Shown here piece after piece: positions 6,197-20,880 of a stretch of DNA of 64,000 nucleotides. Where the stretch lies: positions 1-64,000 of the IMG/VR virus record IMGVR_UViG_3300041411_000129; one strand, given 5' to 3'. A program made the position numbers and the translations under genes. The notes under the pieces were generated by a model, which did not search any database, was not told the DNA's origin, and worked only from the letters and a program-made list of their open reading frames with translations. The stretch's first letter is position 1. Each line of letters opens with the position of its first letter.

Positions 6197-7075
6197 TTAT
6201 GCCGCGTTCGGATCGAACGGATCGTTATAGTGGAGATACATGACACCGGCTGGCGTGAGTACAGTATCCGCCAGTTTCAACTCCATTACGTACTTGTACG
6301 CTGGGTTGGTTGGCAGAGATGCGGAGTTCAGACCGTTACTGAGAACAGTAGCGCCAGACAGGTTCCACGTAGTTGCACCCGGAGTGTTAACCCAGAGAGC
6401 CTTACCGGCGGAGACGTCGATTGCCTTGAACGCAGTGACGAGCTGATCGGCTTGAGTGCTGTCAATAACACCTGGAGCCATCGCCTGCACTTGAGTAAAG
6501 TACGAGGTGAAGTCATAGCCGTACATGTACAGTTGAGCGAAAGTATCGGTATCCAGCGTAGTCGGATAGTTGAGACCAGGCAGCGCTGTAACCTGAATCA
6601 ACTCATCGATTGGAGCGGAACCTTTAGTAACAACGATACTCAGATTGCCGATCCAGCCGACACTACCCGGTTTAGCCGAAAGTACGGCCGTCATGGTGTT
6701 ATCGCCGTTATCAACCAACGGAGCATCATTCAAGTCATCGGTCGTGAACTGAATACCAGTCCAATACTGAATCATCGGGAACAACGTATACACCGTGTCA
6801 GCTGTATACGCCGAAACCTTGAAGCCTGGAATGTTGGCGTCAATCAGATCATTCAATTTCAAACGATCGTAGGTCAGGACCTTAGTGCCCTGATAAGCAC
6901 CACCATCTTTGGCTGTTACACGCAGCGCGGTGTTGTGAGCGGTGACCTGACCTTGCCAAGTACCCTCTACAACTTGCGGCACGCCGAAGACGACGTCTGC
7001 CGCTGTGAACGCCGTCGAGTTGGCAGCATTGAGCGCTGCCAAGAAATCGTCGACAGACTTTGTCATGTAAGACAT
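6197..7075 (-). CDS. Tail-fibre-family structural protein
   Basis: Start moved to ATG 7075 (SD GAGGA); TYDRLKL, GWIG, LPGLNYP, LHYNDP. Confidence 0.8.
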   Translation of the reverse strand: MSYMTKSVDDFLAALNAANSTAFTAADVVFGVPQVVEGTWQGQVTAHNTALRVTAKDGGAYQGTKVLTYDRLKLNDLIDANIPGFKVSAYTADTVYTLFPMIQYWTGIQFTTDDLNDAPLVDNGDNTMTAVLSAKPGSVGWIGNLSIVVTKGSAPIDELIQVTALPGLNYPTTLDTDTFAQLYMYGYDFTSYFTQVQAMAPGVIDSTQADQLVTAFKAIDVSAGKALWVNTPGATTWNLSGATVLSNGLNSASLPTNPAYKYVMELKLADTVLTPAGVMYLHYNDPFDPNAA

Positions 7076-7086
7076 TGGTTCTATCC

Positions 7087-8055
7087 TCAGACGTTGTAGT
7101 GGATGTAGTGGTGACCAGCGCCACAACCCAGTGCAGTATCTTCAACAGGGACGGTGAGGATCAGTACACGGTTGTAGTACTTAGAGTTAGCCAAAGGCGC
7201 AGAATCTCGACCAGCTTGAGTACTCAGGTCAACTACGCGACCAGCCCAGGTCTGGTAGACATACGCTGGAGCACCTCTACCAGCATACGCCAGGCCTTTC
7301 CCGTACAGTCGATTCAGTTCATCGATGAACCGATTACAGAAGGCGACGAGTTCGTTACTTGCACCTTCCCAACTGCCAGGGTAGTTGTTCCACTTAGTCC
7401 CGGCCAAGATGAACGCAGACCAATCGATGGCGTAAGCCATACCGCTGACAATTGTCGGATGTCCTGGAGTCACGAAGTCGTTACCACCTGGGAACATACG
7501 GGCATTGAGATCAGTCACAGTGATCATCGTACTGAGATCCTGCGGAGCACCTTTCCACTTCAGTGCGAACTGGCCGGTGTAAGCAAGGCTCGTCGACTTG
7601 GTCTGTACGGTAACGGTTCTGGTGTAGAATCCATCTTCGATCGTAGTGCCGCGAGTGATGTTCTGATCGACCACATCGTCTGTAGTCAGGTTGATGCCGT
7701 ACTTCGCATTGATGATCGGAAGCAGGGCATACACACTGAACACGATGGCGTTCTGTCCTGCGGTAGAACCTTGGTTTACCGAATACCGATCAATCTGTAG
7801 CGTGATACTGCGGAACAGGACACCCATATCGCGGCGGCGATAGTTGACTTCTTTACGACCGATGAAGTCTTGACCGGCGATTGCACTCAAGGTGATCTTG
7901 GTGTTCATCGCCGAGTTGCCTGGAACCGTGGCTGGAGCAGGGACGCCGAGCAAGACGTTGGTCTTAGTCACCGGAATCCAGTTTTCCACGCCTTGGTTTG
8001 CCAAGTTGATGAGGTCATAAACCTCATCGATAGGCGGTTTACTGAAAATAGGCAT
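7087..8055 (-). CDS. Tail-fibre-family structural protein
   Basis: NYRRRD, FPGGNDF, C-terminal IHYN. Confidence 0.8.
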   Translation of the reverse strand: MPIFSKPPIDEVYDLINLANQGVENWIPVTKTNVLLGVPAPATVPGNSAMNTKITLSAIAGQDFIGRKEVNYRRRDMGVLFRSITLQIDRYSVNQGSTAGQNAIVFSVYALLPIINAKYGINLTTDDVVDQNITRGTTIEDGFYTRTVTVQTKSTSLAYTGQFALKWKGAPQDLSTMITVTDLNARMFPGGNDFVTPGHPTIVSGMAYAIDWSAFILAGTKWNNYPGSWEGASNELVAFCNRFIDELNRLYGKGLAYAGRGAPAYVYQTWAGRVVDLSTQAGRDSAPLANSKYYNRVLILTVPVEDTALGCGAGHHYIHYNV

Positions 8056-8060
8056 CTTGA

Positions 8061-8861
8061 TTAAGCCTCTTCGAGGATGTTGTAATGAAGATACATCGGC
8101 CCGATCATCTGGTCACTGTAGAAGCCTGCCTGAACAACCACTCGGTCAAACCTAGGGTTGCTGTCAGGGACCGCCGAGGTTGGATAGTCGGTAATGTAAC
8201 CTTCATTCCAGCCTGGGATGCCGAGATATGAGCAGGCGTTTTGAAGCGCCGCCCAATCCGTGTAACGCTGACCTGGGCTAGTCGGTTTGATTGCATCACG
8301 AAGACTGGTGAAGTCAACATCCCACGTAACCATCCGAGCAGACATCTTCGAGTTCACCACATCCGGATGATTACGGACTGGCAGAATCTTGATACCAACG
8401 ATGCTATCTAAGAAGGCTTTGGAGTGAGTGAGGTTGATTACAGCCGAACCGATGAAGCCACGGCTGTCAGGCTTAGCCGTCAGCACGAGTTCTTCAGACT
8501 CTCCGTTAGCCACCGTGGGAGGCGTGAACGGTTCGAAGTCATCAACGGTAAGGAAAAGACCGAACGCGCCGTTAATCAGCTTTACAACGCTTGCAGGAGT
8601 GAATTCCTCAAGACTGCGTACATCGGCAGCCTGAATAATGTCACCCAGCACCAAACGTTTGTAATAGATGTCGACTTCATTGTAGTAACCACGCCCCGGA
8701 ACCGACTTTACAGTCAGCTTGGTGTTAGCGGTTTCTGTAGCAACGACTTCGATATCTTGCAGACTAACGTTCATCTCAGTGAACGTCTTTGGCGGCACGT
8801 TGAGGACGTTGAGTTCCTCAATGATCTTACTGGTAGCAGAAGGAACAGTCTCAACAGCCAT
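8061..8861 (-). CDS. Tail-fibre-family structural protein
   Basis: YYKRL, GFIGS, C-terminal LHYN. Confidence 0.8.
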   Translation of the reverse strand: MAVETVPSATSKIIEELNVLNVPPKTFTEMNVSLQDIEVVATETANTKLTVKSVPGRGYYNEVDIYYKRLVLGDIIQAADVRSLEEFTPASVVKLINGAFGLFLTVDDFEPFTPPTVANGESEELVLTAKPDSRGFIGSAVINLTHSKAFLDSIVGIKILPVRNHPDVVNSKMSARMVTWDVDFTSLRDAIKPTSPGQRYTDWAALQNACSYLGIPGWNEGYITDYPTSAVPDSNPRFDRVVVQAGFYSDQMIGPMYLHYNILEEA

Positions 8862-8872
8862 GACTACACCTC

Positions 8873-9706
8873 TTAATCCACAATCGGATCGTTAAAGTGG
8901 AGAACCAATTGACCAGACCACCCCAACGACATGGTGTCATCGAGATCAACGATGATCACATGGTCGTAGTCCTGATTGGAGACAGGCTCGCCAGACGTCG
9001 GGCCAGCGTAACTAATCGTTGCCCCATCCAGAGAGAAGCGGGAAGCTCCGACCAGTTGCCACGCATCGCCAGAGGCTGCCACAAGGGCATCTTTGATGAT
9101 ACCGAGATCAGCTGTACCAACAACGACGTTAATCAGAGTGGCGTAATACGGACTCATGTCACGCCAGTAGGAGTAACCCACCGAAGCGTACGGCTTGGTA
9201 ATCTGAGGTGATGGGTAGTTCAAGCCCGGCAGTTGCGTAACGGCAATCACGTCTTCTAGAGGCTGTGCCCCAAGTGTGACGTGGAAAGTAACTTCACCGA
9301 TCCAGCCGATACTGTCAGGTTCAGCAACGAGGATCACATCGCCAGCGCCGTCCACTAAAGTCAACGCATTGGAGACGATGTCATTCGCTTCAAAGCCGAT
9401 GCCGTGGCGCTTGTTCAGCAGAGTCACGAAGTCGTCAGTTGTCTGAATGTCATACGCCTTGATGTTCGGACTGATCAGGATCGGCAGATCCGCCAGATCA
9501 AGACGCTTATAGCGGATGGTCGTACTACCGTCGTACGGGCTCAGTGGATTGAGCGCAGTGACCAGCAGCGAAGTATTGGTGCCTGATGCATCCGGCGCTA
9601 CTGGAGTAGGCGTACCGAACGTATACTCGCCCTCAACCAGCTCGACGTTGTTTAACGTCTTGATTGCGCCGAGAATCTCATCAAGCGGTCTTTTATACAA
9701 AGCCAT
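8873..9706 (-). CDS. Tail-fibre-family structural protein
   Basis: FGTP, RYKRLDL, GWIG, LPGLNYP, LHFNDP; close paralog of 6197. Confidence 0.8.
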   Translation of the reverse strand: MALYKRPLDEILGAIKTLNNVELVEGEYTFGTPTPVAPDASGTNTSLLVTALNPLSPYDGSTTIRYKRLDLADLPILISPNIKAYDIQTTDDFVTLLNKRHGIGFEANDIVSNALTLVDGAGDVILVAEPDSIGWIGEVTFHVTLGAQPLEDVIAVTQLPGLNYPSPQITKPYASVGYSYWRDMSPYYATLINVVVGTADLGIIKDALVAASGDAWQLVGASRFSLDGATISYAGPTSGEPVSNQDYDHVIIVDLDDTMSLGWSGQLVLHFNDPIVD

Positions 9707-9718
9707 ATCGAAACCTCT

Positions 9719-10516
9719 TTATGACCGGTTGAAGTGAATATACGCGTCGCCCTTGTAGCCGTTGATGTCGATACCAGTCTGGATGCAGACGTTGGTGAAA
9801 TCTTTGTTGGCTTCGGGTACGTCTTTTGTCGAATACGATTTCACTGTCTGCGTCATGAACACAGGGATGTCTGGGAAGCCCATCTCGATGAACATCTTCT
9901 GGACAGCCGGCCAGTTGGTCCAACCGTACCAAGCAACACCAAGGATGTTGGAGTAGTACGAGAAGTCCAGACCCCACGTCGCCATGTCGAGGGAAGGTTT
10001 ACCCAAGTCAAGCGGATTATGGTGAGTCAGAACATCCAGCTCTTTGTTAGCAATCGCTACAGACAGCTGAGGACGAATACGAATGAACTGGATAACGAAT
10101 GAACCTTCGTAACCCAACGAGTTAGGGCTAGCCTTGATTACCAAGTTAGCTTGCTCGTTACCACCCAACCAATCGATCGGCTCGTTGACGATGTCGATAG
10201 GGAGGAAGTTGGTGCCGAGGCGTTTGTTCAGGATTGGCAGCAGACGATGAATGTTCGTCTGACCCAAGTCGTTAATAATCGGACGCACACCACCGAAGAT
10301 CTGATCCAGGTTAATACGGCGATAACCAAACCGCGCGTAACCTTCGTAGTCCTTGTTGTCGTACATCGTAACGGTCGGGAGTTCGATGGAACCATCTGCC
10401 AACGACTTCACGTTGCCATAGTAAAGACCACCTACTTCCAACGGTACACTCAAAGCGTTCTGTTGGTTGATGAGACCGATCAGCGCTTCTTCCGACGATC
10501 CCGGTAAAAGTAACAT
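9719..10516 (-). CDS. Tail-fibre-family structural protein
   Basis: GYRRINL, SLGYEG, IHFN; SD AGGAG. Confidence 0.8.
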   Translation of the reverse strand: MLLLPGSSEEALIGLINQQNALSVPLEVGGLYYGNVKSLADGSIELPTVTMYDNKDYEGYARFGYRRINLDQIFGGVRPIINDLGQTNIHRLLPILNKRLGTNFLPIDIVNEPIDWLGGNEQANLVIKASPNSLGYEGSFVIQFIRIRPQLSVAIANKELDVLTHHNPLDLGKPSLDMATWGLDFSYYSNILGVAWYGWTNWPAVQKMFIEMGFPDIPVFMTQTVKSYSTKDVPEANKDFTNVCIQTGIDINGYKGDAYIHFNRS

Positions 10517-10552
10517 AAGGCATCTCCTGGAGTCGAAGCTGACTTAAACGGT

Positions 10553-10588
10553 AAATAAGAGAGGACGAGGCCGAAACCCCGCCCTCTC
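10553..10588 (-). terminator. Intrinsic terminator after the 10624..11145 gene
   Basis: Minus strand GAGAGGGCGGGG-TTTCGG-CCTCGTCCTCTC-TTATTT; pairs fully with G-U only on the minus strand. Confidence 0.75.
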
Positions 10589-10623
10589 AGATTTATTTGT
10601 ATTAAGACAGTGGTGAAGACCTA

Positions 10624-11145
10624 TTAAACCGGAACGTAGGTCAGACCGTTCAGATCAGTCACGGTCAGGTATTCAGCCAGGTCGATCTCGTCGGAACGGA
10701 GATGGAAGGTCAAGCTGCCGATATACGCCAGCGAGTCAGCCTTCGCCACGACTTGTACGTCGTGAGTTTCGTTCGGGATACCGCCAGTGAAGGTCGGCAG
10801 GTCGCCATCAACGAAGTCTTCCACGCCGAGGTTGATGCTCAGCAGTGCGTTCAGCTGAGGGATGATGTCGGCGATCTTGGTCGACTCACCCAGGCTGAAG
10901 GTTGCGTCCTTGCCGCTTGGCACGAGGATCGCGGTGTTCAGGTGCAGACGGTTGTACTTGAAGGTCTGGGAACCGGTGAAGCCCGAGCCAGCTTTGGCGG
11001 TCAGGGTCACGGAGGTGTTCAGCAGACCAGTGCTGTTTACGGTTGGCAGACCGATGTCGACAACGCCGTAGGTAATACCTTTGTTGTTGTCGGAGTTGAT
11101 AAGGTCAAGGACTACGACCTTGCTTGCTTTAGTCATATCGCTCAT
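10624..11145 (-). CDS. Short tail-fibre-family structural protein, probably abundant
   Basis: FKYNRL, SLAYIG, TDLNGLTY; strong codon bias like the capsid gene. Confidence 0.85.
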   Translation of the reverse strand: MSDMTKASKVVVLDLINSDNNKGITYGVVDIGLPTVNSTGLLNTSVTLTAKAGSGFTGSQTFKYNRLHLNTAILVPSGKDATFSLGESTKIADIIPQLNALLSINLGVEDFVDGDLPTFTGGIPNETHDVQVVAKADSLAYIGSLTFHLRSDEIDLAEYLTVTDLNGLTYVPV

Positions 11146-11192
11146 TACAGGTACTCTTCAGTAAGTAAGGACAAGTCGGCCTTGGCCAACCA

Positions 11193-11201
11193 CATAGAAT
11201 T
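11193..11201 (-). promoter_or_regulatory. Putative late promoter (AATTCTATG)
   Basis: Same 9-mer recurs at 11775-11783; TATG is the phiKZ late-promoter core. Confidence 0.45.
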
Positions 11202-11216
11202 CTGCATGTTCATGGA

Positions 11217-11744
11217 TCAAACGACAGGCTCGTAGGTCAAGCCAGAGAGATCAGTAACAGGCAGATAAGCGCTCAGAGGAATCAGCTCTGGCTTCACCTC
11301 AAGGATCAATGTGTCGAGATAAACCATCGAGTCAAAGGTAACCTTGAGTTCGACGTTAGCCGACAGCACGGAACTTAGATCCGGCAGGGGTTTGTCGATG
11401 ATCTTGTTTGCCGAAAGATTGATGTTCAACCTTTCATTGATAGCAGGCAAGAGATCGGACAGATTCACTTCATCCGTGATCGTGAACGCTAGTGACGTCG
11501 TATCTGGATCGACGAAGTCTACTAACCTTACTCGATTGTAATAGAAGCTTTGACTACCCTCGTAGCCTCTTCCCGCGATGGCTGTACCAACCATCAGGGT
11601 ATTACGGTTTACCCCAGCTACAGGGGTAAAAACGCTCGGAGTGCCAAACGTCACTTGGCTAGACGTCAAGGTCCGGTTCTGGTTATCTTGACGAATGAGA
11701 TCGATAACGACGTCTATCTCACTCCGTGTGTAGTCAATGGCCAT
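11217..11744 (-). CDS. Short tail-fibre-family structural protein
   Basis: Paralog of 10624 (GSQSFYYNR, TDLSGLTY). Confidence 0.8.
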   Translation of the reverse strand: MAIDYTRSEIDVVIDLIRQDNQNRTLTSSQVTFGTPSVFTPVAGVNRNTLMVGTAIAGRGYEGSQSFYYNRVRLVDFVDPDTTSLAFTITDEVNLSDLLPAINERLNINLSANKIIDKPLPDLSSVLSANVELKVTFDSMVYLDTLILEVKPELIPLSAYLPVTDLSGLTYEPVV

Positions 11745-11774
11745 ACACGAGTTCTCGTTAAGGAGTCAGGAGGT

Positions 11775-11783
11775 CATAGAATT
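11775..11783 (-). promoter_or_regulatory. Putative late promoter (AATTCTATG)
   Basis: Identical to the 11193-11201 motif, upstream of a structural gene. Confidence 0.45.
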
Positions 11784-11787
11784 TCGG

Positions 11788-12327
11788 TCAGTTAATCAAC
11801 TGATCGTAAACTCCACCATCGGTCATTGGCTCGCCCCCAGGCGCTACAAGGCCGTTCAATACGTTGTTCGGGAATTGTGACGCTAGGGTGAGGACTCCGT
11901 TGCTTGCGTTGAGTACAAGCGTTCCTAGCCACACGAATGACCTATTTGTAACGGTGATGGTAACAACACCATTCACGTTGGTGTAATCTTTGATATCGTT
12001 CAGACTTAAAACAAAGTTGTATTTAAGTCTAAGGGCAGTCACCACGCTAGCTGGCGTGATCTCCCCCAGTACTTCGACACTGACAACTGGCTCGCCAATA
12101 TCGATGAATGCTTGCTGCATGTCCAAGCGGTTGTAGTAGTAGACGTAACTACCGGTGATCTGCTTACCACGAGCCGTGGCGCCTACCTTGGTGTTCTTTC
12201 CATCGAACTCGCCAGGCACCAATCCGGTGAAAGACAAATTCGACGTACTCAGCGTTACGCCGTATCCTTCTAGGATGGCCTGATTCGCTACCTGAATCAT
12301 CTCGGCCAGCATTTCCTCACCGGTCAT
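11788..12327 (-). CDS. Short tail-fibre-family structural protein
   Basis: YYYNRLD, VWLGTL, NVLNGL. Confidence 0.75.
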   Translation of the reverse strand: MTGEEMLAEMIQVANQAILEGYGVTLSTSNLSFTGLVPGEFDGKNTKVGATARGKQITGSYVYYYNRLDMQQAFIDIGEPVVSVEVLGEITPASVVTALRLKYNFVLSLNDIKDYTNVNGVVTITVTNRSFVWLGTLVLNASNGVLTLASQFPNNVLNGLVAPGGEPMTDGGVYDQLIN

Positions 12328-12387
12328 AGTCGATACCTGTGCATAAATGGATTAACTGTACATCCTATTTGGATTGGAATGAAAAAG

Positions 12388-12405
12388 ATTACAGTCATAT
12401 ATTGT
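12388..12405 (+). promoter_or_regulatory. Putative early (virion RNAP) promoter
   Basis: ATTACAGTCATATATTGT; similar motifs at 15998, 20863 and 36632; resembles phiKZ early TATATTAC. Confidence 0.7.
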
Positions 12406-12445
12406 CGGAGTACACATAACAACGAGATCCATTCTGGATACGTTG

Positions 12446-12461
12446 AACGACCGAGGAGGTC
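12446..12461 (+). promoter_or_regulatory. RBS hairpin copy 1 (AAC GACC GAGGA GGTC)
   Basis: Repeated motif directly before the ATG. Confidence 0.85.
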
Positions 12462-12464
12462 ACC

Positions 12465-12803
12465 ATGTCCACAGTTTTCAATGTAAAAGCAGCTTACGAG
12501 GCTGTAACCAACATCCCTGAGATGATTAAATGGTTACAGGACGTTCAAGCTGTGATGCTCGAGGAGATCGATAACTGGACCTATACCGGGTCTGGCGATT
12601 TCCGTGCCAAGATCGCTGCCCTCGATGAGTGGACAGCCAAGCACCTCTCGCAGATGGCTAACGTCAGCGAGTTGTGGATCACGCTTGATCATGATCAAGC
12701 GATGGCAAAGCTCAACGACTTCAGTGATAGGCTAGATGCCCATCGCGCAAGTATCGTTGAGTTCGGGCAGAAGGTGGAGGAACTGAAGGCCGATCTTGGC
12801 TAA
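12465..12803 (+). CDS. Hypothetical early protein (helical)
   Basis: 112 aa, strong SD; N-terminus paralogous to the next gene. Confidence 0.85.
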   Translation: MSTVFNVKAAYEAVTNIPEMIKWLQDVQAVMLEEIDNWTYTGSGDFRAKIAALDEWTAKHLSQMANVSELWITLDHDQAMAKLNDFSDRLDAHRASIVEFGQKVEELKADLG

Positions 12804-12846
12804 GGTTTCCCACTTAACAACGTCATCCATTTCGGGTGACGTCACC

Positions 12847-12862
12847 AACGACCGTGGAGGTC
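12847..12862 (+). promoter_or_regulatory. RBS hairpin copy 2 (AAC GACC GTGGA GGTC)
   Basis: Repeated motif; defines start at 12866. Confidence 0.85.
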
Positions 12863-12865
12863 CAG

Positions 12866-13114
12866 ATGTCAGAGTTCAATGCGAAAGAAGCTTACGAGTT
12901 AGTTGTAGACAAAGCTGGCATGATTGATTGGGTGCTTTCAGTTAGCGATCAGCTTTCTAAAGAATCCGATCGTCGAGCTGCTGCTATCTCGATGGGGCGG
13001 CATGCTACCTTGATGTCTAACGAGGAGTGGGATGCGCTGGCTAAAGAGTACACCGATTGGACCATGCAGGAACAATCTCTGACCGCCTTCTGCTTCTCTT
13101 TGTTCAAACCCTAG
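12866..13114 (+). CDS. Hypothetical early protein, paralog of 12465
   Basis: MSEFNAKEAYELV..MIDW versus MSTVFNVKAAYEAV..MIKW. Confidence 0.8.
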   Translation: MSEFNAKEAYELVVDKAGMIDWVLSVSDQLSKESDRRAAAISMGRHATLMSNEEWDALAKEYTDWTMQEQSLTAFCFSLFKP

Positions 13115-13118
13115 ATAC

Positions 13119-13143
13119 AAAAGGCCGGCAATACTGCCGGCCT
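13119..13143. terminator. Stem-loop (short U-tract on minus strand)
   Basis: AAA-AGGCCGGCA-ATAC-TGCCGGCCT. Confidence 0.55.
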
Positions 13144-13148
13144 ATCCC

Positions 13149-13164
13149 AACGACTGAGGAAGTC
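13149..13164 (+). promoter_or_regulatory. RBS hairpin copy 3 (AAC GACT GAGGA AGTC)
   Basis: Compensatory C-G to T-A stem change. Confidence 0.85.
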
Positions 13165-13169
13165 CGACC

Positions 13170-13499
13170 ATGATGAACATCCCGACATTCTTGAAGCTGT
13201 GCGCAGTAGTTGCAACCATTGGCGCCGCAGCTGGTGCTACCGTAAGCTATCTGGAACGTAAAGAGAATCTCCGGAAGGCCGAAGTTATCAAACGCAACAT
13301 CTCCGATCTGGTACGTCTCTGCGATGACATCGTTGCACTGTACGGTCAGAAATCTCTGAGCGCCCAACAGTTGGCAAACCTGATGGAGATCCGTCGTCGT
13401 AACGATAGCAAGTTCGCCAACATGCGGTACGATGAGATCCTGGTGATTCAAAGCCAGATCGAAGTTATCTACAACGTTCTTAACTCCAGCCGTCCCTAA
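13170..13499 (+). CDS. Hypothetical early protein with N-terminal membrane anchor
   Basis: Hydrophobic N-terminus; paralog of 13518 (L.G...LS..Q...L...R....FA...Y.E). Confidence 0.85.
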   Translation: MMNIPTFLKLCAVVATIGAAAGATVSYLERKENLRKAEVIKRNISDLVRLCDDIVALYGQKSLSAQQLANLMEIRRRNDSKFANMRYDEILVIQSQIEVIYNVLNSSRP

Positions 13500-13513
13500 C
13501 GTCCGAGGAGGAC
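13498..13513 (+). promoter_or_regulatory. RBS hairpin copy 4 (AAC GTCC GAGGA GGAC)
   Basis: Compensatory A-T to T-A stem change. Confidence 0.85.
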
Positions 13514-13517
13514 TATC

Positions 13518-13856
13518 ATGATTTCCGATGCAATCAAAATCGCAGCAGGCTTGACAACAATCGCAGCGACTGTCGGTGGGTTGATTTATTACGTCAGTAA
13601 GAAAACCGCCGAGAACGACCTCCTGCTTATCAAACAGAAGGTTGGCGCTAACATCGACTTCATCGATGCTTACGTCGCCCTGATGGGTAGCGATGCTCTG
13701 TCGGTGAAACAGATGGGTGAGTTGGAGCAGCTGCGTCAAGACTACAAGGTCAACTTCGCCACCTGTACGTACAACGAGATGGTTATCCTGTTGGCTCAAT
13801 CCAACGGCATCTACATGACCGTCCGTGACGCTGCGAAAGCGCATCAGAAGAAATGA
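13518..13856 (+). CDS. Hypothetical early protein with N-terminal membrane anchor
   Basis: Paralog of 13170. Confidence 0.85.
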   Translation: MISDAIKIAAGLTTIAATVGGLIYYVSKKTAENDLLLIKQKVGANIDFIDAYVALMGSDALSVKQMGELEQLRQDYKVNFATCTYNEMVILLAQSNGIYMTVRDAAKAHQKK

Positions 13857-14314
13857 TCGGTAAAGATCCGGTTGAACTGTTTCTTACTGAGTTAGCAGAG
13901 AGCGTTCCAAACGCTCTCGTTGTTTTTACTCAAGGTAATTGTTTCAAGCTGTACTTGATACTGCGTAGGGTTTACCCGCAAGCAAAGCCGTACTACGCGA
14001 TGTGTCCAGGACATGTTTACACGGAGATCGACGGAAGCTACTACGACATCTGGGGTAAAGTCTCCAGCATCGAATTGAAGCGAATGCAGAACTACCTGAT
14101 CTACCTCCCTGAAGAACCGCGGATATTCAAAGAAGCATTCCGCTGGCAATACCAACCCGAACTCGAAACGACTGAGGAAGTCTCATGCAAAGCATCGAAC
14201 AGCAAATCAAAGATGATGTCACTAAAGTCATTGGTGACAAGAACACTCTCGCGGCTATCGACGAAGCTATCGAAAGCACTGACTACGGCAAGAAGTTCCA
14301 CGCCAACTGGATGA
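13853..14314 (+). CDS. Putative transglutaminase/papain-like Cys-His-Asp protein
   Basis: GNCF...GHVY...YYDIWG; ATGA overlap with upstream stop. Confidence 0.6.
   Translation: MIGKDPVELFLTELAESVPNALVVFTQGNCFKLYLILRRVYPQAKPYYAMCPGHVYTEIDGSYYDIWGKVSSIELKRMQNYLIYLPEEPRIFKEAFRWQYQPELETTEEVSCKASNSKSKMMSLKSLVTRTLSRLSTKLSKALTTARSSTPTG
14167..14182 (+). promoter_or_regulatory. RBS hairpin copy 5 (AAC GACT GAGGA AGTC)
   Basis: Identical to copy 3; lies inside the upstream ORF. Confidence 0.85.
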
Positions 14315-14712
14315 TCGCCCGCGGCTTCTACAACCTCGGCATGAACATCGACTGGACGATTGCCGTTGAGCGTGCCAACGACGTTGTCGCGAAAGATCCG
14401 GATGACCTGGGCTGCAAGATGGCATTCATCGACGCCGACGGCATCGAGACTCTCATCATCCCAGGTAAACACGGCGGCGCTGTCATGCGTGCTAATAAGA
14501 CCGTAGAACTCTACGGTAAGTACAAGTCCTGCAATCTTGACGTGTGGATGGCTCTTGATGGCATCAGCCTTACACACACCTTGCTGGACCTCATGACGCA
14601 AGGTCTTCCATTCATGGGCCTTCTGCCAATCCTCGATTCCATTATCGAGAAGAAAGCAGACCGTGATGAGATGACCCGCCTCCACGCCAAATTCAGAAGC
14701 TACCTCGCTTAA
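14185..14712 (+). CDS. Hypothetical early protein
   Basis: 175 aa, typical codon usage, SD present. Confidence 0.85.
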   Translation: MQSIEQQIKDDVTKVIGDKNTLAAIDEAIESTDYGKKFHANWMIARGFYNLGMNIDWTIAVERANDVVAKDPDDLGCKMAFIDADGIETLIIPGKHGGAVMRANKTVELYGKYKSCNLDVWMALDGISLTHTLLDLMTQGLPFMGLLPILDSIIEKKADRDEMTRLHAKFRSYLA

Positions 14713-14722
14713 GGAAACAATC

Positions 14723-15076
14723 ATGTCACTCGTATCTACAACCATCATGGGTAATGACCTGGTGCTCGGTTCTCATGACGACCCACCAGTCGGTCACCGG
14801 GTTGGTTCGGTTCCGGTGAAGTTCGATAACGGTAAGACCGAGTACATCAGCGTATTCGGTTCTATCCACATCTACACCGACTCCAGAGAGCGTGATCACT
14901 TCGAATCAGAACTGCGTAAGTTCTGCCAAGATCCTGATACCGTTCAGAAGGTTCTCGGTGTCGCAGTCCAGAGCGCCCACGCTAAACGCTTCAACCCCTC
15001 ACGCTCCCAAACCGATCGCGGCTATTATCGCGCCGGTCGTAACGGGAATGTGGAATCACACCAACGCAGCATGTAA
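14723..15076 (+). CDS. Hypothetical early protein
   Basis: 117 aa, SD TAAGGA. Confidence 0.8.
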   Translation: MSLVSTTIMGNDLVLGSHDDPPVGHRVGSVPVKFDNGKTEYISVFGSIHIYTDSRERDHFESELRKFCQDPDTVQKVLGVAVQSAHAKRFNPSRSQTDRGYYRAGRNGNVESHQRSM

Positions 15077-15089
15077 CACCATTATACCT

Positions 15090-15105
15090 AACGACCGCGG
15101 AGGTC
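15090..15105 (+). promoter_or_regulatory. RBS hairpin copy 6 (AAC GACC GCGGA GGTC)
   Basis: Repeated motif before ATG 15110. Confidence 0.85.
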
Positions 15106-15109
15106 ACAG

Positions 15110-15628
15110 ATGTCTACTTACAAAGCATACAAACTTGAAGGCCGTAAAGTTGTTCTCTCCGAGAATGGCGTATCGAAAGTAATCATTCCACCAGTTGGCA
15201 TTTGCTTCAGTGAAATGCGTAACACTTGGCAAGCCAACATCCTGGACGAGAACGGCGAATGGATGGCAGTGCGTTACAGCGCTAACACCCACGGTTTCAT
15301 GGAAGCACTTCAGATGGCAATGGATGTGCGGGAACTGTCCCTTAAGTTCCTCCTCAATGTTCGTATGCTCCCACGCTTGCGTAAAGCTTATGACATCAAA
15401 GAAGTAGGTGGTTTGTTCCGAGTTCGCGACCCTATCGAGAAGTGCTACAAGTTCTTCACGACTAAAGCTTTCGCTAAAGCCTTCAACGAGGCAGTCACAG
15501 CGAAGTGGGTTGATAACCATCGGTTCGATGCAGACGAAATGGTTCAGCCGTACATGCCAGAGATTCCATTGGTACGGATGGACTACCTTACAGCCATTAG
15601 CCCAGCTGCCTCACGGAGCATTCACTAA
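15110..15628 (+). CDS. Putative AP2-domain DNA-binding protein
   Basis: GICF...WQANI...RYSANTHGFMEALQMAMDVR fits the AP2 pattern; no HNH motif. Confidence 0.6.
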   Translation: MSTYKAYKLEGRKVVLSENGVSKVIIPPVGICFSEMRNTWQANILDENGEWMAVRYSANTHGFMEALQMAMDVRELSLKFLLNVRMLPRLRKAYDIKEVGGLFRVRDPIEKCYKFFTTKAFAKAFNEAVTAKWVDNHRFDADEMVQPYMPEIPLVRMDYLTAISPAASRSIH

Positions 15629-15786
15629 TGAATAAGCCAGGGATTCCGTTGGAAGATGTAATCGACGCTTCTGTAAAGCGCCGCAAGCGTCGTAACCGCG
15701 ATAAGGCTATCCGCGCATCTTGCGCAGTATTCATCGCGCTCAACGTTGTATTCATCATCGGTTATTCGGTAAGCAAGTATGTCTGA
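15628..15786 (+). CDS. Small membrane protein, 52 aa (not in ORF track)
   Basis: MNKPGIPLEDVIDASVKRRKRRNRDKAIRASCAVFIALNVVFIIGYSVSKYV; TAATG overlap, SD GGAG. Confidence 0.7.
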   Translation: MNKPGIPLEDVIDASVKRRKRRNRDKAIRASCAVFIALNVVFIIGYSVSKYV

Positions 15787-15997
15787 GGTCGAACCTGAGT
15801 TTGAAGAAGAAAGGGTTGACAATCTGACTCTGTGGTTACTTGCAGCGGCACTGTCGTTCGGTCTTTCCATCTCGATGGTCTACATCGACTGGCATGATCG
15901 GACGAGCCGCTGCGTCGGCTCTAAAGAAGTGGTACGTGCTGGTATCGCACTGGACGTAAGTTCAGGGGTAGTTGTTCGAGACTGCCCAGTCGAATAA
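15779..15997 (+). CDS. Small membrane protein
   Basis: 72 aa, one TM segment, two C-terminal Cys. Confidence 0.65.
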   Translation: MSEVEPEFEEERVDNLTLWLLAAALSFGLSISMVYIDWHDRTSRCVGSKEVVRAGIALDVSSGVVVRDCPVE

Positions 15998-16015
15998 ATT
16001 ACAGACAGATATCAT
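15998..16015 (+). promoter_or_regulatory. Putative early promoter
   Basis: ATTACAGACAGATATCAT. Confidence 0.65.
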
Positions 16016-16051
16016 CCACTCGCAACAATCACCTAATGCAAGGAGTTTCAA

Positions 16052-16198
16052 ATGCGTGAAGTACTATTGATCAGCTTCGGTATTGGTCTCGGCTATTACA
16101 TTCGTCATCTGCGTGCGCAGCGCGACGATGAGGAGTTGAAGCTTAAAGGTGCTGAAGCAGCAGCAGCTCGTAAGGCGGCTGAATCGGCAACTGCCTAA
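16052..16198 (+). CDS. Small membrane-anchored protein, 48 aa (not in ORF track)
   Basis: MREVLLISFGIGLGYYIRHLRAQRDDEELKLKGAEAAAARKAAESATA; SD AAGGAG; own promoter and terminator. Confidence 0.8.
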   Translation: MREVLLISFGIGLGYYIRHLRAQRDDEELKLKGAEAAAARKAAESATA

Positions 16199-16202
16199 AC
16201 GG

Positions 16203-16249
16203 CATAGAGAGCGTGGCGCAAGCCACGCTCTCATTACTTCTTTTTTTTT
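16203..16249. terminator. Bidirectional terminator
   Basis: GAGAGCGTGGC-GCAA-GCCACGCTCTC then T9, between convergent genes. Confidence 0.9.
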
Positions 16250-16262
16250 GTCGTGAAATCGA

Positions 16263-17807
16263 TCAATCGTCGAAGTCGCGCCAATCAGAACCACCTTCGC
16301 CATTGGTAGTACGCGCACCTACTTTCTTATACGAAAGATCTTCGTCAAGAAGCAGATCGTACTTGAAGCCCATCATTGGGTAATCTAAGAACTTCAATGC
16401 GTAATACTTATCCTGTTCCTGAGTTGCACCGATCTTACGATGCTTACCCCATTGGAACTCAGCCCATGCTTGACCTTGGTGAATAGTCTTCGCGGTAAAG
16501 ACCTCATAGTCAAACTCGGTGTTGAGCTTCTTGGAACCCTCGTAGTAGCCTTTATCCACCAGACGCTTGATGTAGTCGTCAGGATAGGTACGGGCCAAGT
16601 CACGAGTCGCTGGAGACAGTTGGTGAGCTGTGTACGCAAAGATGTTGTTTGGTGACGTGAACTTACGGACGCGACGGTGCGCTCCTTGAATCTCGTCACC
16701 AGCAACAGCCGCCACGATGTTGTTCTTGGTCAGCAGGTTGATGTAGTCGCAACCAGCCGAAACAATCTCGTAGCCTTCTTTGATGAATTGCTTCAAGTCG
16801 TCGATGTAGTCGTCGACGTCTGCACCACGAGTGTAGTCCAGAATCATGACGTGCCAGCCATTGGCTGTCATCTTGTCGAAAACGTACTGAGCGATCTCAC
16901 GAGAGTCGACGCCCTTAGTTACAACAGGTAGACCAAACTCGTATTGCATCAACAGCGTGTATAGCTTCTGAAGAACCAGCTCGGGTTTATCTTCCGCAGT
17001 AGCAAACACATGCAGCGGTTTCTTCGTCTCATCGAACAGCACGGGACTGTTGAAGATACAGAATGCAAACAGCTGATCCAGCAGAGTACCGGACTTGTTC
17101 ATACCCGGCAATGCGGATACGTTAGCCCATTCACCACGACGTGCGCCTTCCTGATCACCAGTCATCCGGTTAGCGGCCTTGAAGCCGTATTTGAGGATAG
17201 CTCGTGGATCAATGGCAAGCTGAGCCATCGCGTAGACTTCCGACAGGCTTTCAACATCACTGATGTCAATGCGGCGCATCGCACCACCAGCTTGACGCTT
17301 ACCAGACAATGGAAGCTCTGTCATCTTGGCGATGATCTCTTCACGGAAGCGTGCAACGTCACCGACCTTCTCACGATCAAAGCCGAGCTTACGTGCAGCG
17401 TCACGCAGGAGTTTCGTGAACTCCTCTACCCCGATAAAGTCGTACAGCTCGGCTGTTGCTTCATCGAGTTTATCCTTGGCTGCATCAGGATCGTCCACCA
17501 GAAGAATGGTGCGGGTAAATAGATCATATAGGCGATCATTATCCCCTGCGGCGATTCGGATGCGACCCATTAGGTCGTTAATGTCGTACGGATGCTCTGA
17601 TCCTTTCTTCTTCATCCAGATGACTAAGTTCCGAACTCGGGACAAAGCGTTGTGTTCCCGGTTGGAGTTTGAAGCATCATCAGTTAGATGAAGGTGATCG
17701 AGTGTACGATCGATTACATTGAGCAAAGCCTCAGGGTCATTCTTGCCCGAATGACTCGAGTAGTACATGGCACTGATGGCCTTGGCTAACAGTAGCTTAA
17801 TTTCCAT
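16263..17807 (-). CDS. dnaB: DnaB-like replicative helicase (phiKZ gp118-like)
   Basis: Walker A variant ALPGMNKS, DYINLL, TAHQLS, GKHR motifs; divergent from capsid operon. Confidence 0.9.
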   Translation of the reverse strand: MEIKLLLAKAISAMYYSSHSGKNDPEALLNVIDRTLDHLHLTDDASNSNREHNALSRVRNLVIWMKKKGSEHPYDINDLMGRIRIAAGDNDRLYDLFTRTILLVDDPDAAKDKLDEATAELYDFIGVEEFTKLLRDAARKLGFDREKVGDVARFREEIIAKMTELPLSGKRQAGGAMRRIDISDVESLSEVYAMAQLAIDPRAILKYGFKAANRMTGDQEGARRGEWANVSALPGMNKSGTLLDQLFAFCIFNSPVLFDETKKPLHVFATAEDKPELVLQKLYTLLMQYEFGLPVVTKGVDSREIAQYVFDKMTANGWHVMILDYTRGADVDDYIDDLKQFIKEGYEIVSAGCDYINLLTKNNIVAAVAGDEIQGAHRRVRKFTSPNNIFAYTAHQLSPATRDLARTYPDDYIKRLVDKGYYEGSKKLNTEFDYEVFTAKTIHQGQAWAEFQWGKHRKIGATQEQDKYYALKFLDYPMMGFKYDLLLDEDLSYKKVGARTTNGEGGSDWRDFDD

Positions 17808-18373: not shown

Positions 18374-18552
18374 TAAGTGATACATGTTATGCAAATCACT
18401 GCTATTACGGTGATATGTATAAACACACGGTTTCCATAACGCCTGCGGGACGTAGGATCGCTGTCTCTAGTCGACTAGTGACAGGTCGGCGTCGATCCTA
18501 AAATAGAAGCTTCTATCCTTCGGCAACACCAAATTGCAATTTGGAGCAATTC

Positions 18553-20802: not shown

Positions 20803-20834
20803 CATAAAGCCGGGACTTCGGTCCCGGCTTTATG
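20803..20834. terminator. Terminator-like hairpin after capsid gene
   Basis: CATAAAGCCGGGAC-TTCG-GTCCCGGCTTTATG. Confidence 0.85.
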
Positions 20835-20862: not shown

Positions 20863-20880
20863 ATTACAGACATACATTAC
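20863..20880 (+). promoter_or_regulatory. Putative early promoter for the operon containing the nvRNAP subunit
   Basis: ATTACAGACATACATTAC. Confidence 0.75.

What the first reader, a model, noticed from the sequence alone, without database searches (positions are those of the whole stretch)
12446..15105. Six-copy RBS hairpin with compensatory changes across the early island: candidate translational regulon
Seen: six starts are preceded 2-5 nt upstream by AAC + 4-bp stem + GNGGA loop. The copies are GACC-GAGGA-GGTC (12446), GACC-GTGGA-GGTC (12847), GACT-GAGGA-AGTC (13149, 14167), GTCC-GAGGA-GGAC (13498) and GACC-GCGGA-GGTC (15090). Every stem substitution is compensated (C-G to T-A, A-T to T-A), and only loop position 2 varies freely. 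The SD core lies in the loop. I did not see this motif before any core gene. Known: CsrA/RsmA/RsmE bind GGA in hairpin loops overlapping the SD (consensus A/U-CANGGANG-U/A). Here the loop is GNGGA rather than ANGGA, and the AAC leader is invariant. Inference: a site for an RNA-binding protein (a phage factor, or host Rsm at altered affinity) that co-regulates translation or selects these mRNAs, for example for export or preferential translation. It could also serve as microhomology for gene duplication.
Basis: partly seen in the sequence, partly recalled or inferred. Interest (0 to 1): 0.85.

Follow-up and report, generated by a model that had tools for sequence, protein, structure and literature searches.

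The report
Conserved hairpin ribosome-binding site, jumbo phage
A subset of small accessory genes in an uncultivated phiKZ-like giant phage, probably early ones, each start with the same tiny RNA hairpin that carries the ribosome-binding site; its stem is kept by compensatory mutations and it marks points where gene cassettes are swapped, but what it does has not been shown.

Summary
Six copies of AAC + 4-bp stem + GNGGA loop sit 2-5 nt before six ATGs at 12446-15105. A covariance model finds no other copy in the 64-kb window.

The window is the first 64 kb of a 254-kb phiKZ-like jumbo phage contig. That genome holds at least 16 copies, and relatives hold many more, in front of at least 24 unrelated small ORFans.

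Stems change only by paired substitutions, including at orthologous sites. No broken copies exist.

More distant relatives carry a different uniform version, GTCC-UUAGGA-GGAC, at the same syntenic genes. Two cultured relatives have none.

The window island starts at a conserved promoter of the kind that marks early operons in these phages. Two cassette gain, loss or replacement events end exactly in the motif.

Best reading: a selected, portable RNA hairpin ribosome-binding module. The loop fits the GNRNA pentaloop family, and its 3' half plus the 3' arm form the Shine-Dalgarno sequence. It probably tunes or insulates initiation in cis. An operator for an RNA-binding protein is the main rival.

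It fails two features of the CsrA/Rsm consensus. The closest analogue is the Start-Associated Sequences of cluster K mycobacteriophages, whose function is also unknown.

The parts
12388..12414 (+). Candidate early (virion RNA polymerase) promoter: A-rich tract, ATTACAGTCATATATTG (12388-12404), then GTACA (12410-12414)
   Evidence: The same 17-mer (ATTACAGTCAYAYATWG) lies 45-65 nt upstream of the first hairpin of clusters in L003, L009, L021, L046, L056, L061, L062 and L073. The only other intergenic look-alikes in the window are at 15998 and 20863, the latter ahead of the non-virion RNAP beta gene. Review PMC7598289 states that only early promoters are detectable as conserved AT-rich motifs in these phages. 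The timing is inferred, not shown.
12425..12441 (+). Short leader hairpin (AUCC / AUUCU loop / GGAU) between promoter and first RBS hairpin
   Evidence: Read by eye, not tested. Related CC-ATTYC-GG hairpins follow the promoter in L009, L021, L046 and L061. One also precedes copy 2, at about 12813-12833.
12446..12461 (+). RBS hairpin copy 1: AAC GACC GAGGA GGTC, 3 nt before the ATG of gene A
   Evidence: 27.4 bits
12465..12803 (+). Gene A, 112 aa ORFan
   Evidence: Paralogue of B (33% aa, E 9e-5). No Pfam or PHROG family.
12847..12862 (+). RBS hairpin copy 2: AAC GACC GTGGA GGTC, 3 nt before the ATG of gene B
   Evidence: 29.4 bits. Left end of the gene-B indel seen in L079.
12866..13114 (+). 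Gene B, 82 aa ORFan; absent from the 97%-identical contig L079
13149..13164 (+). RBS hairpin copy 3: AAC GACT GAGGA AGTC, 5 nt before the ATG of gene C
   Evidence: 25.4 bits. It is the right end of the gene-B indel. Homology to the 188-kb relative also resumes here after the A+B replacement.
13170..13499 (+). Gene C, 109 aa, N-terminal hydrophobic segment
   Evidence: paralogue of D, 29% aa, E 8e-13. The membrane segment is read from the sequence, not predicted by a tool.
13498..13513 (+). RBS hairpin copy 4: AAC GTCC GAGGA GGAC, 4 nt before the ATG of gene D; AA of AAC is part of gene C's TAA stop
   Evidence: 29.9 bits. The orthologous site in the 188-kb relative and in L019 is GACC/GGTC, a compensatory swap.
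13518..13856 (+). Gene D, 112 aa, N-terminal hydrophobic segment
13853..14314 (+). Gene E, YunG-like protein. Its start overlaps D's stop (ATGA), it has no hairpin, and its ORF runs through copy 5 and overlaps gene F by 130 nt
   Evidence: PF24591 E 1.7e-17, phrog_4814, translation. Most of this gene is missing in the 188-kb relative.
14167..14182 (+). RBS hairpin copy 5: AAC GACT GAGGA AGTC, 2 nt before the ATG of gene F
   Evidence: 24.7 bits
14185..14712 (+). Gene F, 175 aa ORFan
   Evidence: no family, no phage hit
14723..15076 (+). Gene G, 117 aa, ordinary SD (AAGGAA) without hairpin
   Evidence: Homologues in L002, L016, L064, L113 and L145.
15090..15105 (+). RBS hairpin copy 6: AAC GACC GCGGA GGTC, 4 nt before the ATG of gene H
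   Evidence: 30.5 bits. H orthologues at 43-47% aa identity keep A[AT]C-GACC-GNGGA-GGTC in L002, L016 and L064. L113 and L145 carry GTCC-TTTGGA-GGAC instead.
15110..15628 (+). Gene H, 172 aa, the most widely conserved island gene
15628..16198 (+). Genes I (15628-15786), J (15779-15997) and K (16052-16198): small proteins with hydrophobic segments. I and J start by overlap with the preceding gene; K has its own promoter-like site at 15998 and a plain SD. None has a hairpin.
16207..16232 (+). Terminator-like hairpin followed by a T-run, closing the island

Best explanation
The motif is a self-folding, portable ribosome-binding module in the mRNA. A 4-bp stem closes a five-base loop G-N-G-G-A. 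The loop's GGA plus the first bases of the 3' arm form the Shine-Dalgarno sequence (GGAGG, or GGAAG in two copies), 2-6 nt before the AUG. The flanks are G-poor.

It heads the independently initiated small accessory genes of operons that begin at a conserved, probably early (virion RNA polymerase) promoter. This holds in this phiKZ-like jumbo phage and its uncultivated relatives.

Shown:
- the copies, their position and their strand;
- their restriction to this gene class in the window;
- selection for base pairing;
- long-term conservation in front of diverged and unrelated genes;
- coincidence with cassette junctions.

Inferred mechanism: the hairpin acts in cis on initiation.
- The loop displays GG(A) to nucleate pairing with the 16S anti-SD.
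- The stem half-masks an otherwise very strong SD and keeps the G-rich site from pairing with neighbouring sequence.
- A cassette would then be translated at a set rate wherever it lands.

The loop fits the GNRNA pentaloop family (sheared G.A pair, fourth base flipped out). That fit would explain why G1 and A5 never vary while position 2 is free.

As a by-product, the repeated 16-mer serves as microhomology for gain, loss and replacement of cassettes.

The same structure could also be read by a protein; that is the main rival.
For: - Copies and chance.
- Genome-wide spread: at least 16 copies in the source contig, all on one strand and all 1-9 nt before a start.
- Not inherited with the genes: the 49 downstream proteins fall into 26 clusters. 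In the window, six copies precede four unrelated families, and the A/B and C/D paralogues share only 29-33% aa.
- Pairing is selected. In 228 kb of related sequence, sites chosen without regard to pairing (A-N-C + N4 + GNGGA + N4 near a start) have [4,6,2,0,36] for 0 to 4 pairs.
- Three of the four stem pairs show changes on both sides. Position 2 takes AU, UA, CG and GC.
- Orthologous sites swap GTCC/GGAC with GACC/GGTC, and GCCC/GGGC with GGCC/GGCC.
- The hairpin, not SD strength, is what is conserved. GG-arm copies hold 4 of the 5 strongest SD:anti-SD energies among 65 genes, but the AGTC copies are average.
- Right-arm variants GGAC, GGGC, GGCC and AGTC lose anti-SD complementarity yet keep the stem.
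- Conserved in front of H orthologues at 43-46% aa identity.
- G-poor flanks.
- All 50 loops fit G-N-R-N-A (family description in PMC9830547 and PMC12550061).
- Promoter association.
- Cassette junctions.
Against: - The stem is thermodynamically weak. Local folds are no more stable than shuffled sequence (z -1.2 to +0.9), and one of six minimum-energy folds does not use it.
- A purely cis-acting role does not obviously need the conserved AAC, the near-fixed G-C first pair or the invariant C-G third pair.
- All copies within a genome share one loop type while a sister lineage uses another. That pattern is the one expected when an operator co-evolves with a protein.
- No expression or structure data exist for this uncultivated phage.
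- Early timing rests on a promoter analogy.
- Not every gene behind such a promoter has the hairpin (16052 and 20952).
- Most loci outside the window were fetched by the motif itself, so copy counts there are biased.
Confidence: 0.5

Rival explanations
1. The hairpin is an operator for a trans-acting RNA-binding protein that regulates this gene class as a translational regulon. The protein could be a phage repressor that shuts off early accessory genes, by the logic of T4 RegA or the MS2 coat protein. It could also be a boxB/N-like arginine-rich protein, or the host's CsrA/Rsm.
For: - Sequence-specific conservation beyond pairing: loop G1 50/50, third pair C-G 45/45 distinct rows, first pair G-C 43/45, and the AAC flank.
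- Confined to one gene class.
- The loop type is uniform within a genome but differs between lineages at orthologous genes. The window has 6 GNGGA and 0 U-type copies; L113 has 0 and 5.
- GGA in the loop of a hairpin of 4 bp or fewer overlapping the SD is the CsrA hallmark (PMC7652899).
- GNRNA pentaloops are classic protein platforms.
Against: - The A that CsrA contacts is an invariant G, and the loop is one base short.
- There is one hairpin per gene, not paired sites.
- No RNA-binding domain was found in 40 window proteins, although three quarters of the genome was not seen.
- The same hairpin occurs in an unrelated temperate phage and widely in IMG/VR. That is awkward for a clade-specific factor.
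Confidence: 0.3
2. The hairpin protects the SD region or the mRNA from a nuclease. Candidates are a GGAG-specific enzyme of the T4 RegB kind, or host RNase E acting on intercistronic regions early in infection.
For: - RegB cuts GGAG in the SDs of early T4 mRNAs, and secondary structure protects against it (PMC3014915).
- The hairpin sits at intercistronic positions of a polycistronic, probably early, transcript.
Against: - Two of the six copies have GGAA, not GGAG.
- A 4-bp stem leaves GGA exposed in the loop.
- No RegB-like gene was seen.
- Core genes with GGAG SDs carry no such protection.
Confidence: 0.08
3. The repeat is only a recombination or cassette-junction sequence acting at the DNA level. 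Its complementarity would be kept by templated (quasi-palindrome) correction rather than by selection on RNA.
For: - L079 lacks gene B, with the junction inside copies 2 and 3.
- The 188-kb relative replaces A+B with an unrelated gene. Homology ends at 12463 and resumes at 13149.
- This resembles the PeSL cassettes of T4-like phages (PMC2839356).
Against: - Strict strand and position: always 1-9 nt before a start, with GGA invariant.
- Two other indels in the same island do not use the motif.
- The shared stretch at the L079 junction is only about 6 nt.
- H orthologues keep the motif without any rearrangement.
Confidence: 0.07
4. The motif is an ordinary strong RBS copied by tandem duplication, so the resemblance is by descent or chance. 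Alternatively it is a palindromic site for a dimeric DNA-binding protein.
For: - A/B and C/D are paralogue pairs.
- GACC...GGTC is an inverted repeat in DNA.
Against: - The paralogues share only 29-33% aa while the 16-mer is almost intact.
- Four unrelated families in the window and at least 24 overall carry it.
- Paired substitutions restore complementarity rather than a fixed half-site sequence.
- The centre of the motif is asymmetric, and copies have a single orientation.
Confidence: 0.03

Closest known systems
Start-Associated Sequences (SAS) of cluster K mycobacteriophages (GGGATAGGAGCCC)
   Same: - A 13-base asymmetric repeat with complementary outer bases around an SD core, 3-7 bp before start codons.
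- 11-19 copies per genome, in one orientation.
- Found only at non-structural genes of unrelated families.
- Positions conserved that cannot pair with 16S rRNA.
- Function still unknown in 2025 (PMC3203893; PMC12699233).
   Different: - Different sequence, phage group and host phylum.
- SAS has 3 + 3 outer bases and a 7-base centre, with no reported covariation.
- About half of SAS carry an upstream 17-bp inverted repeat (ESAS), thought to bind a DNA-binding protein.
- Here the stem covaries and cassette junctions fall in the motif.
CsrA/RsmA/RsmE binding sites
   Same: GGA in the loop of a short hairpin of 4 bp or fewer that overlaps the SD. Binding blocks the ribosome (PMC7652899).
   Different: - The consensus is A(N)GGA(N) in a six-base loop, with ACA and GGA 100% conserved in SELEX. 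Here the loop is G-N-G-G-A, five bases, with G invariant where CsrA contacts A.
- Natural targets usually have two or more sites for the dimer. Here there is one per gene.
PeSL (promoter-early stem-loop) cassettes of T4-like phages
   Same: Short conserved regulatory repeats between ORFan genes of hyperplastic regions. Recombination between them explains insertions, deletions and replacements between close relatives (PMC2839356; PMC4122927).
   Different: - PeSLs are a promoter plus a terminator stem-loop.
- This motif is an RBS hairpin. Only the first gene of an island has a promoter, and the hairpin is far too weak to terminate.
boxB hairpins of lambdoid phages (GNRNA pentaloop bound by N)
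   Same: A short stem closing a G-N-R-N-A pentaloop. G1 and A5 are fixed and position 2 is free, as in the GNRA-like fold with one base flipped out (PMC9830547; PMC12550061).
   Different: - boxB sits in nut sites, not at the SD, and works in transcription antitermination.
- Here positions 3-4 are fixed as GG because they are the SD.
- The sister lineage uses U-rich six-base loops that do not fit GNRNA.
T4 RegA and RegB control of early mRNAs; RNA-phage coat-protein operators
   Same: Phage systems that act on the translation-initiation regions of many early mRNAs: RegA represses about 30, and RegB cuts GGAG in SDs (PMC3014915). From my own knowledge, not checked here: the MS2-type coat protein represses the replicase gene by binding a hairpin at its start.
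   Different: - RegA sites are A+U-rich and unstructured.
- RegB needs unstructured GGAG, and two copies here lack GGAG.
- No RegA or RegB homologue was seen.

Membership tests
CsrA/Rsm binding site | GGA in the single-stranded loop of a hairpin | tested here: met
   GGA is loop positions 3-5 in all 50 aligned copies. The hairpin is predicted in 5 of 6 local folds.
CsrA/Rsm binding site | Short stem (four or fewer contiguous pairs) | tested here: met
   4-bp stem. Criterion from PMC7652899.
CsrA/Rsm binding site | Conserved A two bases 5' of GGA (ANGGA; ACA 100% in SELEX) | tested here: not met
   G at that position in 50 of 50 copies.
CsrA/Rsm binding site | Six-base loop ANGGAN closed by AC/GU pairing | tested here: not met
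   Five-base loop GNGGA closed by C-G or U-A.
CsrA/Rsm binding site | Binding by CsrA/RsmA/RsmE with effect on translation | not testable with these tools
   Needs EMSA, toeprinting or reporters. The host is unknown.
Start-Associated Sequence (cluster K mycobacteriophages) | Match to GGGATAGGAGCCC (two or fewer mismatches) in a cluster K genome | tested here: not met
   The sequence is AAC-GACC-GNGGA-GGTC in a phiKZ-like phage.
Start-Associated Sequence (cluster K mycobacteriophages) | Asymmetric repeat with an SD core a few bases before starts of a subset of non-structural genes, in one orientation | tested here: met
   It works like an SAS but is not a member.
PeSL cassette (T4-like phages) | Promoter plus terminator stem-loop in each repeat | tested here: not met
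   The promoter motif occurs only ahead of the first copy of a cluster. A 4-bp stem with no T-run is not a terminator; the only one found is at 16207-16232.
PeSL cassette (T4-like phages) | Indel and replacement boundaries between close relatives fall in the repeats | tested here: met
   Two of four events in this island do: the gene-B indel in L079 and the A+B replacement in the 188-kb relative.
GNRNA pentaloop / boxB-type hairpin | Loop sequence G-N-R-N-A | tested here: met
   50 of 50 loops are G-N-G-G-A. Family definition in PMC9830547.
GNRNA pentaloop / boxB-type hairpin | GNRA-like fold with sheared G.A pair and flipped-out fourth base | not testable with these tools
   Needs NMR or chemical probing.
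GNRNA pentaloop / boxB-type hairpin | Part of a nut site bound by an N-like antiterminator | not tested
   No boxA-like element or N homologue was looked for beyond the Pfam scans, which found none. The position at the SD argues against it.
T4 RegB target | Unstructured GGAG in the SD of early mRNAs | tested here: not met
   Copies 13149 and 14167 read GGAA. The site is structured, and structure protects against RegB.
Rfam families | Match to any curated RNA family | tested here: not met
   Nothing near threshold in 12000-16500.

The most novel reading that the evidence does not exclude
The hairpins are operators of a dedicated, phage-encoded RNA-binding protein that has co-evolved with them. 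One lineage uses GNGGA pentaloops and the sister lineage uses UUAGGA-type loops. Together they would form a translational regulon that times or selects the early accessory mRNAs of nucleus-forming jumbo phages. This would be a structured-RNA counterpart of T4 RegA, built on a boxB-like GNRNA loop fused to the Shine-Dalgarno sequence.
Probability: 0.22. Interest if true: 0.8.

Novelty: new variant of a known kind. Interest (0 to 1): 0.6.

Why it matters
Post-transcriptional control in phiKZ-like phages is poorly understood. Their early genes are mostly small ORFans with unknown roles in host takeover.

A 16-base signature that marks such genes would help in three ways:
- It gives a sequence-only way to find and group them in uncultivated jumbo phages.
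- It points to a distinct initiation regime for them.
- It offers a compact, portable RBS element for engineering.

It is also a second, independent case of the start-associated sequences described in 2011 in mycobacteriophages and still unexplained. Here it comes with covariation evidence that the RNA structure matters, and with lineage-specific variants that make swap experiments straightforward. The junction data add a mechanism for turnover of accessory genes in these genomes.

Tried and rejected
- DNA searches of the island against GenBank phages, both near and distant, found nothing. tblastn with gene F found nothing.
- PHROGs and Pfam on the island proteins gave only YunG-like for gene E.
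- Rfam gave nothing, and no tRNA was found.
- Literature searches for the motif strings found nothing relevant.
- The syntenic islands of two cultured relatives have no hairpin SD: Pseudomonas phage pPa_SNUABM_DT01 (L114) and Ralstonia phage RSL2 (L173). No cultured model was therefore found.
- DNA searches to place the other motif-bearing contigs gave nothing for L058 and L145. For L016 they gave only a helicase match to RSL2-like phages.
- The scan of bacterial genomes returned at least 120 hits across all phyla. By my own rough estimate that is about chance level for 596 Gb, and it gives no host clue.
- A single-protein helicase search reached only close relatives plus L113.
- Folding energies do not set the region apart from shuffles. 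They say little for a 4-bp stem.
- Rejected: integron attC-like site. The motif is too short, tied to the strand and the start codon, and has the SD inside.
- Rejected: hairpin promoter of the N4 type. It lies inside the 5' UTR, 2-6 nt from the ATG.
- Rejected: RNA thermometer of the fourU or ROSE type. There is no U-run pairing with the SD.
- Rejected: antisense sRNA target. No reverse-complement copy was found on either strand of the window or the source contig.
- The 100% pairing is circular, because those copies were chosen for perfect stems. Searches are the unbiased versions.

Full report
**What the window is.** PHROG matches identify a phiKZ-like jumbo phage: a 728-aa phiKZ-type major head protein, a DnaB-like helicase, virion structural paralogues and a multisubunit-RNAP subunit. 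The head protein is at most 37% identical to any GenBank phage; the best match is Pseudomonas phage pPa_SNUABM_DT01. ORF 22084-23736 is the homologue of the non-virion RNA polymerase beta subunit. No GenBank phage matches the island at the DNA level. A scan of IMG/VR shows that the window is positions 1-64000 of contig IMGVR_UViG_3300041411_000129, 253,921 bp, in the same coordinates.

**The observation.** Spacers to the ATG are 3, 3, 5, 4, 2 and 4 nt.
- The pattern gives 6 hits against 0.67 expected.
- A perfect 4-bp stem around GNGGA occurs 7 times on both strands of 64 kb, and 6 of these are the copies.
- For GNGGA pentamers placed before ORF starts, the number of complementary flank pairs (0 to 4) is [16,15,10,3,6]. 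Elsewhere it is [128,125,63,12,1], which fits a random expectation. Sites are therefore either perfect hairpins or background.
- A covariance model built from 50 copies and scored at every window position returns the six at 24.7-30.5 bits, then nothing above 13.8 bits.
- My own gene calls show ordinary unstructured SDs at the other 59 genes.

**Anatomy of the island.**
- On the + strand, a conserved 17-mer, ATTACAGTCATATATTG, sits at 12388 after an A-rich tract.
- A short leader hairpin follows, then eleven small genes (A to K).
- A terminator-like hairpin with a T-run lies at 16207-16232.
- Six genes carry the hairpin. Of the five that do not, three start by overlapping the previous gene (E, I, J), one has its own promoter-like site (K), and one has a plain SD (G).
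- A/B and C/D are old paralogue pairs (33% and 29% aa). F and H are unrelated to them and to each other.
- By eye, five of the eleven proteins have a hydrophobic segment.
- Only E has a family, YunG-like. Its ORF reads through copy 5 and overlaps F by 130 nt.

**Beyond the window.** Three IMG/VR scans for the three stem variants show more copies in the same genome. They lie near 88.7 kb, 179.6-180.3 kb, 192.9 kb, 233.2 kb and 244.1-245.3 kb. That makes at least 16 copies, all on one strand and all 1-9 nt before a start.

A 188-kb relative (IMGVR_UViG_3300006051_000001) has a parallel set. More distant syntenic relatives also have it: L002, L016 and L064, with head protein 75% identical in L016 and L064, helicase 58-66% and protein H 43-46%. 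The 49 downstream proteins fall into 26 similarity clusters. The motif therefore does not simply travel with one gene family.

**Is the stem selected?**
- In 228 kb of related sequence I took sites chosen without regard to pairing: A-N-C, four bases, GNGGA, four bases, near a start. They have 0 to 4 pairs in [4,6,2,0,36] cases.
- New stem variants appear: GCCC/GGGC and GGCC/GGCC, and TGCC/GGCA and TACC/GGTA in other phages. All are complementary.
- On the 50-copy alignment, three of the four pairs change on both sides. Position 2 takes AU, UA, CG and GC, and no pair is broken. The 100% figure there is circular, because I selected perfect stems.
- Orthologous sites differ by double changes. Copy 4 is GTCC/GGAC here and GACC/GGTC in the 188-kb relative and in L019. 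L021:593 against L046:1498 shows the same swap. L073:9513 (GCCC/GGGC) against L003:8104 (GGCC/GGCC) shows a C-G to G-C swap.
- Right-arm variants lose complementarity to the anti-SD but keep the stem. The AGTC copies have only average SD strength, while GG-arm copies hold 4 of the 5 strongest SDs of 65 genes.
- The structure is therefore the conserved property, not SD strength.
- Against this, the stem is weak. Local folds are no more stable than shuffles, and one of six minimum-energy folds does not use it.

**A second version in a sister lineage.** L113 comes from a 248-kb contig fetched through the helicase (55% identical), so it is unbiased for the motif. It has no GNGGA copy. Its syntenic island has five copies of GTCC-TT(A/T)GGA-GGAC, 3-6 nt before ATGs, including one in front of the H orthologue.

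A scan for that 14-mer finds the same design in many contigs of 174-277 kb: a GTCC/GGAC stem and 5-6-base U/A-rich loops ending in GGA. L145 has six copies and L162 four. The architecture is therefore older than either sequence version, and all copies in a genome share one version.

Two cultured relatives, DT01 and RSL2, have plain SDs in the syntenic island.

**Not only jumbo phages.** A family of contigs (L008, L015, L048, L053, L058, L070) carries two copies after a shared 12-mer: GACC-GAGGA-GGTC and the doubly compensated TGCC-GAGGA-GGCA. L008 is a temperate phage of about 44 kb with an integrase, a RecE/Sak recombination pair and a primase-helicase.

Of 88 hits, 44 were 1-8 nt before an ATG. 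Two controls with the left arm permuted gave 7 loci (3 near an ATG, all one family) and 39 loci (6 near an ATG).

**Timing.** The 17-mer promoter-like motif precedes the first hairpin of clusters in eight further loci, at 45-65 nt. In the unbiased window its only intergenic look-alikes are at 15998, inside the island, and at 20863. The latter is ahead of the operon that holds the non-virion RNAP beta gene, which must be made by the injected enzyme. A review states that in RNAP-encoding jumbo phages a conserved AT-rich motif can be found by sequence analysis upstream of early operons, while middle and late promoters cannot be predicted that way (PMC7598289). Calling the island early is therefore a reasonable inference, not a result.

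**Cassette junctions.**
- L079 is 97% identical to the window and lacks gene B. The alignment breaks at 12863 and resumes at 13147. The hybrid copy has copy 2's left flank and copy 3's stem.
- The 188-kb relative has an unrelated 106-aa gene in place of A+B. Homology ends at 12463 and resumes at 13149, which are the edges of copies 1 and 3.
- Two other differences in the island do not use the motif: most of gene E is missing in the 188-kb relative, and an extra gene lies between G and H in L079 and the 188-kb relative.

**How it most likely works.** What is shown is a selected RNA hairpin fused to the SD, specific to a gene class and portable between unrelated genes and phages. I infer a cis-acting role in initiation.
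- The loop exposes GG(A) for first contact with the anti-SD.
- The stem masks the rest of a strong SD and, with the G-poor flanks, shields the site from neighbouring sequence.
- This would suit genes that are shuffled often.
- All 50 loops fit G-N-R-N-A, the one well-established pentaloop family. In that family G1 and A5 form a sheared pair and the fourth base flips out (PMC9830547, PMC12550061). This would explain the fixed G1 and the free position 2 without a protein. It is a sequence-level fit only.

The main rival is a protein operator. In its favour are the conserved AAC, the near-fixed first and third pairs, and the genome-wide uniformity of the loop type with a switch between lineages. 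Against it are the spread to unrelated phages, the misfit to the CsrA consensus, and the lack of any RNA-binding domain in 40 window proteins, though three quarters of the genome was not examined.

**Comparison with known systems.** The closest analogue is the Start-Associated Sequence of cluster K mycobacteriophages. It has the same position, orientation, gene class and copy number, with complementary outer bases around an SD core, and its function is still open. By sequence and host this motif is not a member.

It shares with T4-type PeSLs the role of repeats at cassette boundaries, but it is neither a promoter nor a terminator. It shares the GGA-in-loop idea with CsrA sites but fails two consensus features. 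T4 RegA and RegB act on early initiation regions but need unstructured RNA. I found no paper describing this motif.

**Verdict.** The feature is real, well supported and not described before. It is best filed as a new variant of start-associated RBS motifs, with stronger structural evidence than its precedent. Its function is unproven.

Noticed in passing
window 12388-12414; also 15998-16014 and 20863-20879: A conserved promoter-like motif, A-rich tract + ATTACAG(T/A)CA.A.AT + GTACA, occurs only in + strand intergenic regions. It heads the accessory island, the small gene K, and the operon holding the non-virion RNAP beta gene. It is probably this phage's early (virion RNAP) promoter.
   Followed up: partly
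window 12425-12441 and about 12813-12833; L009, L021, L046, L061 upstream of their first hairpin: A second small hairpin with a conserved AUUYC loop (CC-ATTYC-GG) sits between the promoter and the first RBS hairpin. Copy 2 keeps it without a promoter, so the A-to-B duplication included part of the leader.
   Followed up: no
L113:13880-17605 (- strand); L145, L162, L151, L115/L167, L116, L156, L131: A sister family of RBS hairpins, GTCC-(U/A)(U/A)NGGA-GGAC, has an invariant stem and variable 5-6-base loops. It occurs in many 174-277-kb IMG/VR contigs, with up to six copies in 4 kb.
   Followed up: partly
L008:13338 and 13855 (- strand); L015, L048, L053, L058, L070: A temperate phage lineage of about 44 kb (integrase, RecE/Sak, primase-helicase) carries the same hairpin twice behind a shared 12-mer, TGGAAAACTA(A/C)C. 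One copy has the doubly compensated stem TGCC/GGCA.
   Followed up: partly
window 13853-14314: The YunG-like gene E has no stop before gene F. Its ORF runs through hairpin copy 5 and overlaps F by 130 nt in another frame. Most of E is deleted in the 188-kb relative.
   Followed up: partly
window 15076/15077; L079:7159-7517 (-); L061:3170-3580: Close relatives carry an extra gene of about 110 aa between G and H that the window lacks. It has a plain SD next to G's stop codon, and the junction is not in the hairpin.
   Followed up: partly
window 6197-12327 (- strand): There is a run of paralogous genes: 11217-11744 and 11788-12327 match virion-structural PHROGs (phrog_1037/2935), and tblastn links the ORFs from 6197 onward at 25-36% aa. 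The one at 6197-7075 has a degenerate look-alike of the motif, AAC GTCT GAGGA TAGA, which is conserved in the 188-kb relative but does not form the 4-bp stem.
   Followed up: no
window 18534-18552: The major head gene's SD also lies in the loop of a possible 4-bp hairpin (TTGC AATTTGGA GCAA, 3 nt before the ATG). This may be chance.
   Followed up: no
window 15628-15786: Gene I (52 aa) has an arginine-rich stretch (KRRKRRNRDK) followed by a hydrophobic segment. It is most simply a small membrane protein, but it is the only arginine-rich peptide seen in the island.
   Followed up: no
window 20805-20832: A strong stem-loop (CCGGGAC-TTCG-GTCCCGG, then TTTAT) lies downstream of the head gene, just before the promoter-like site at 20863. 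It looks like a terminator.
   Followed up: no
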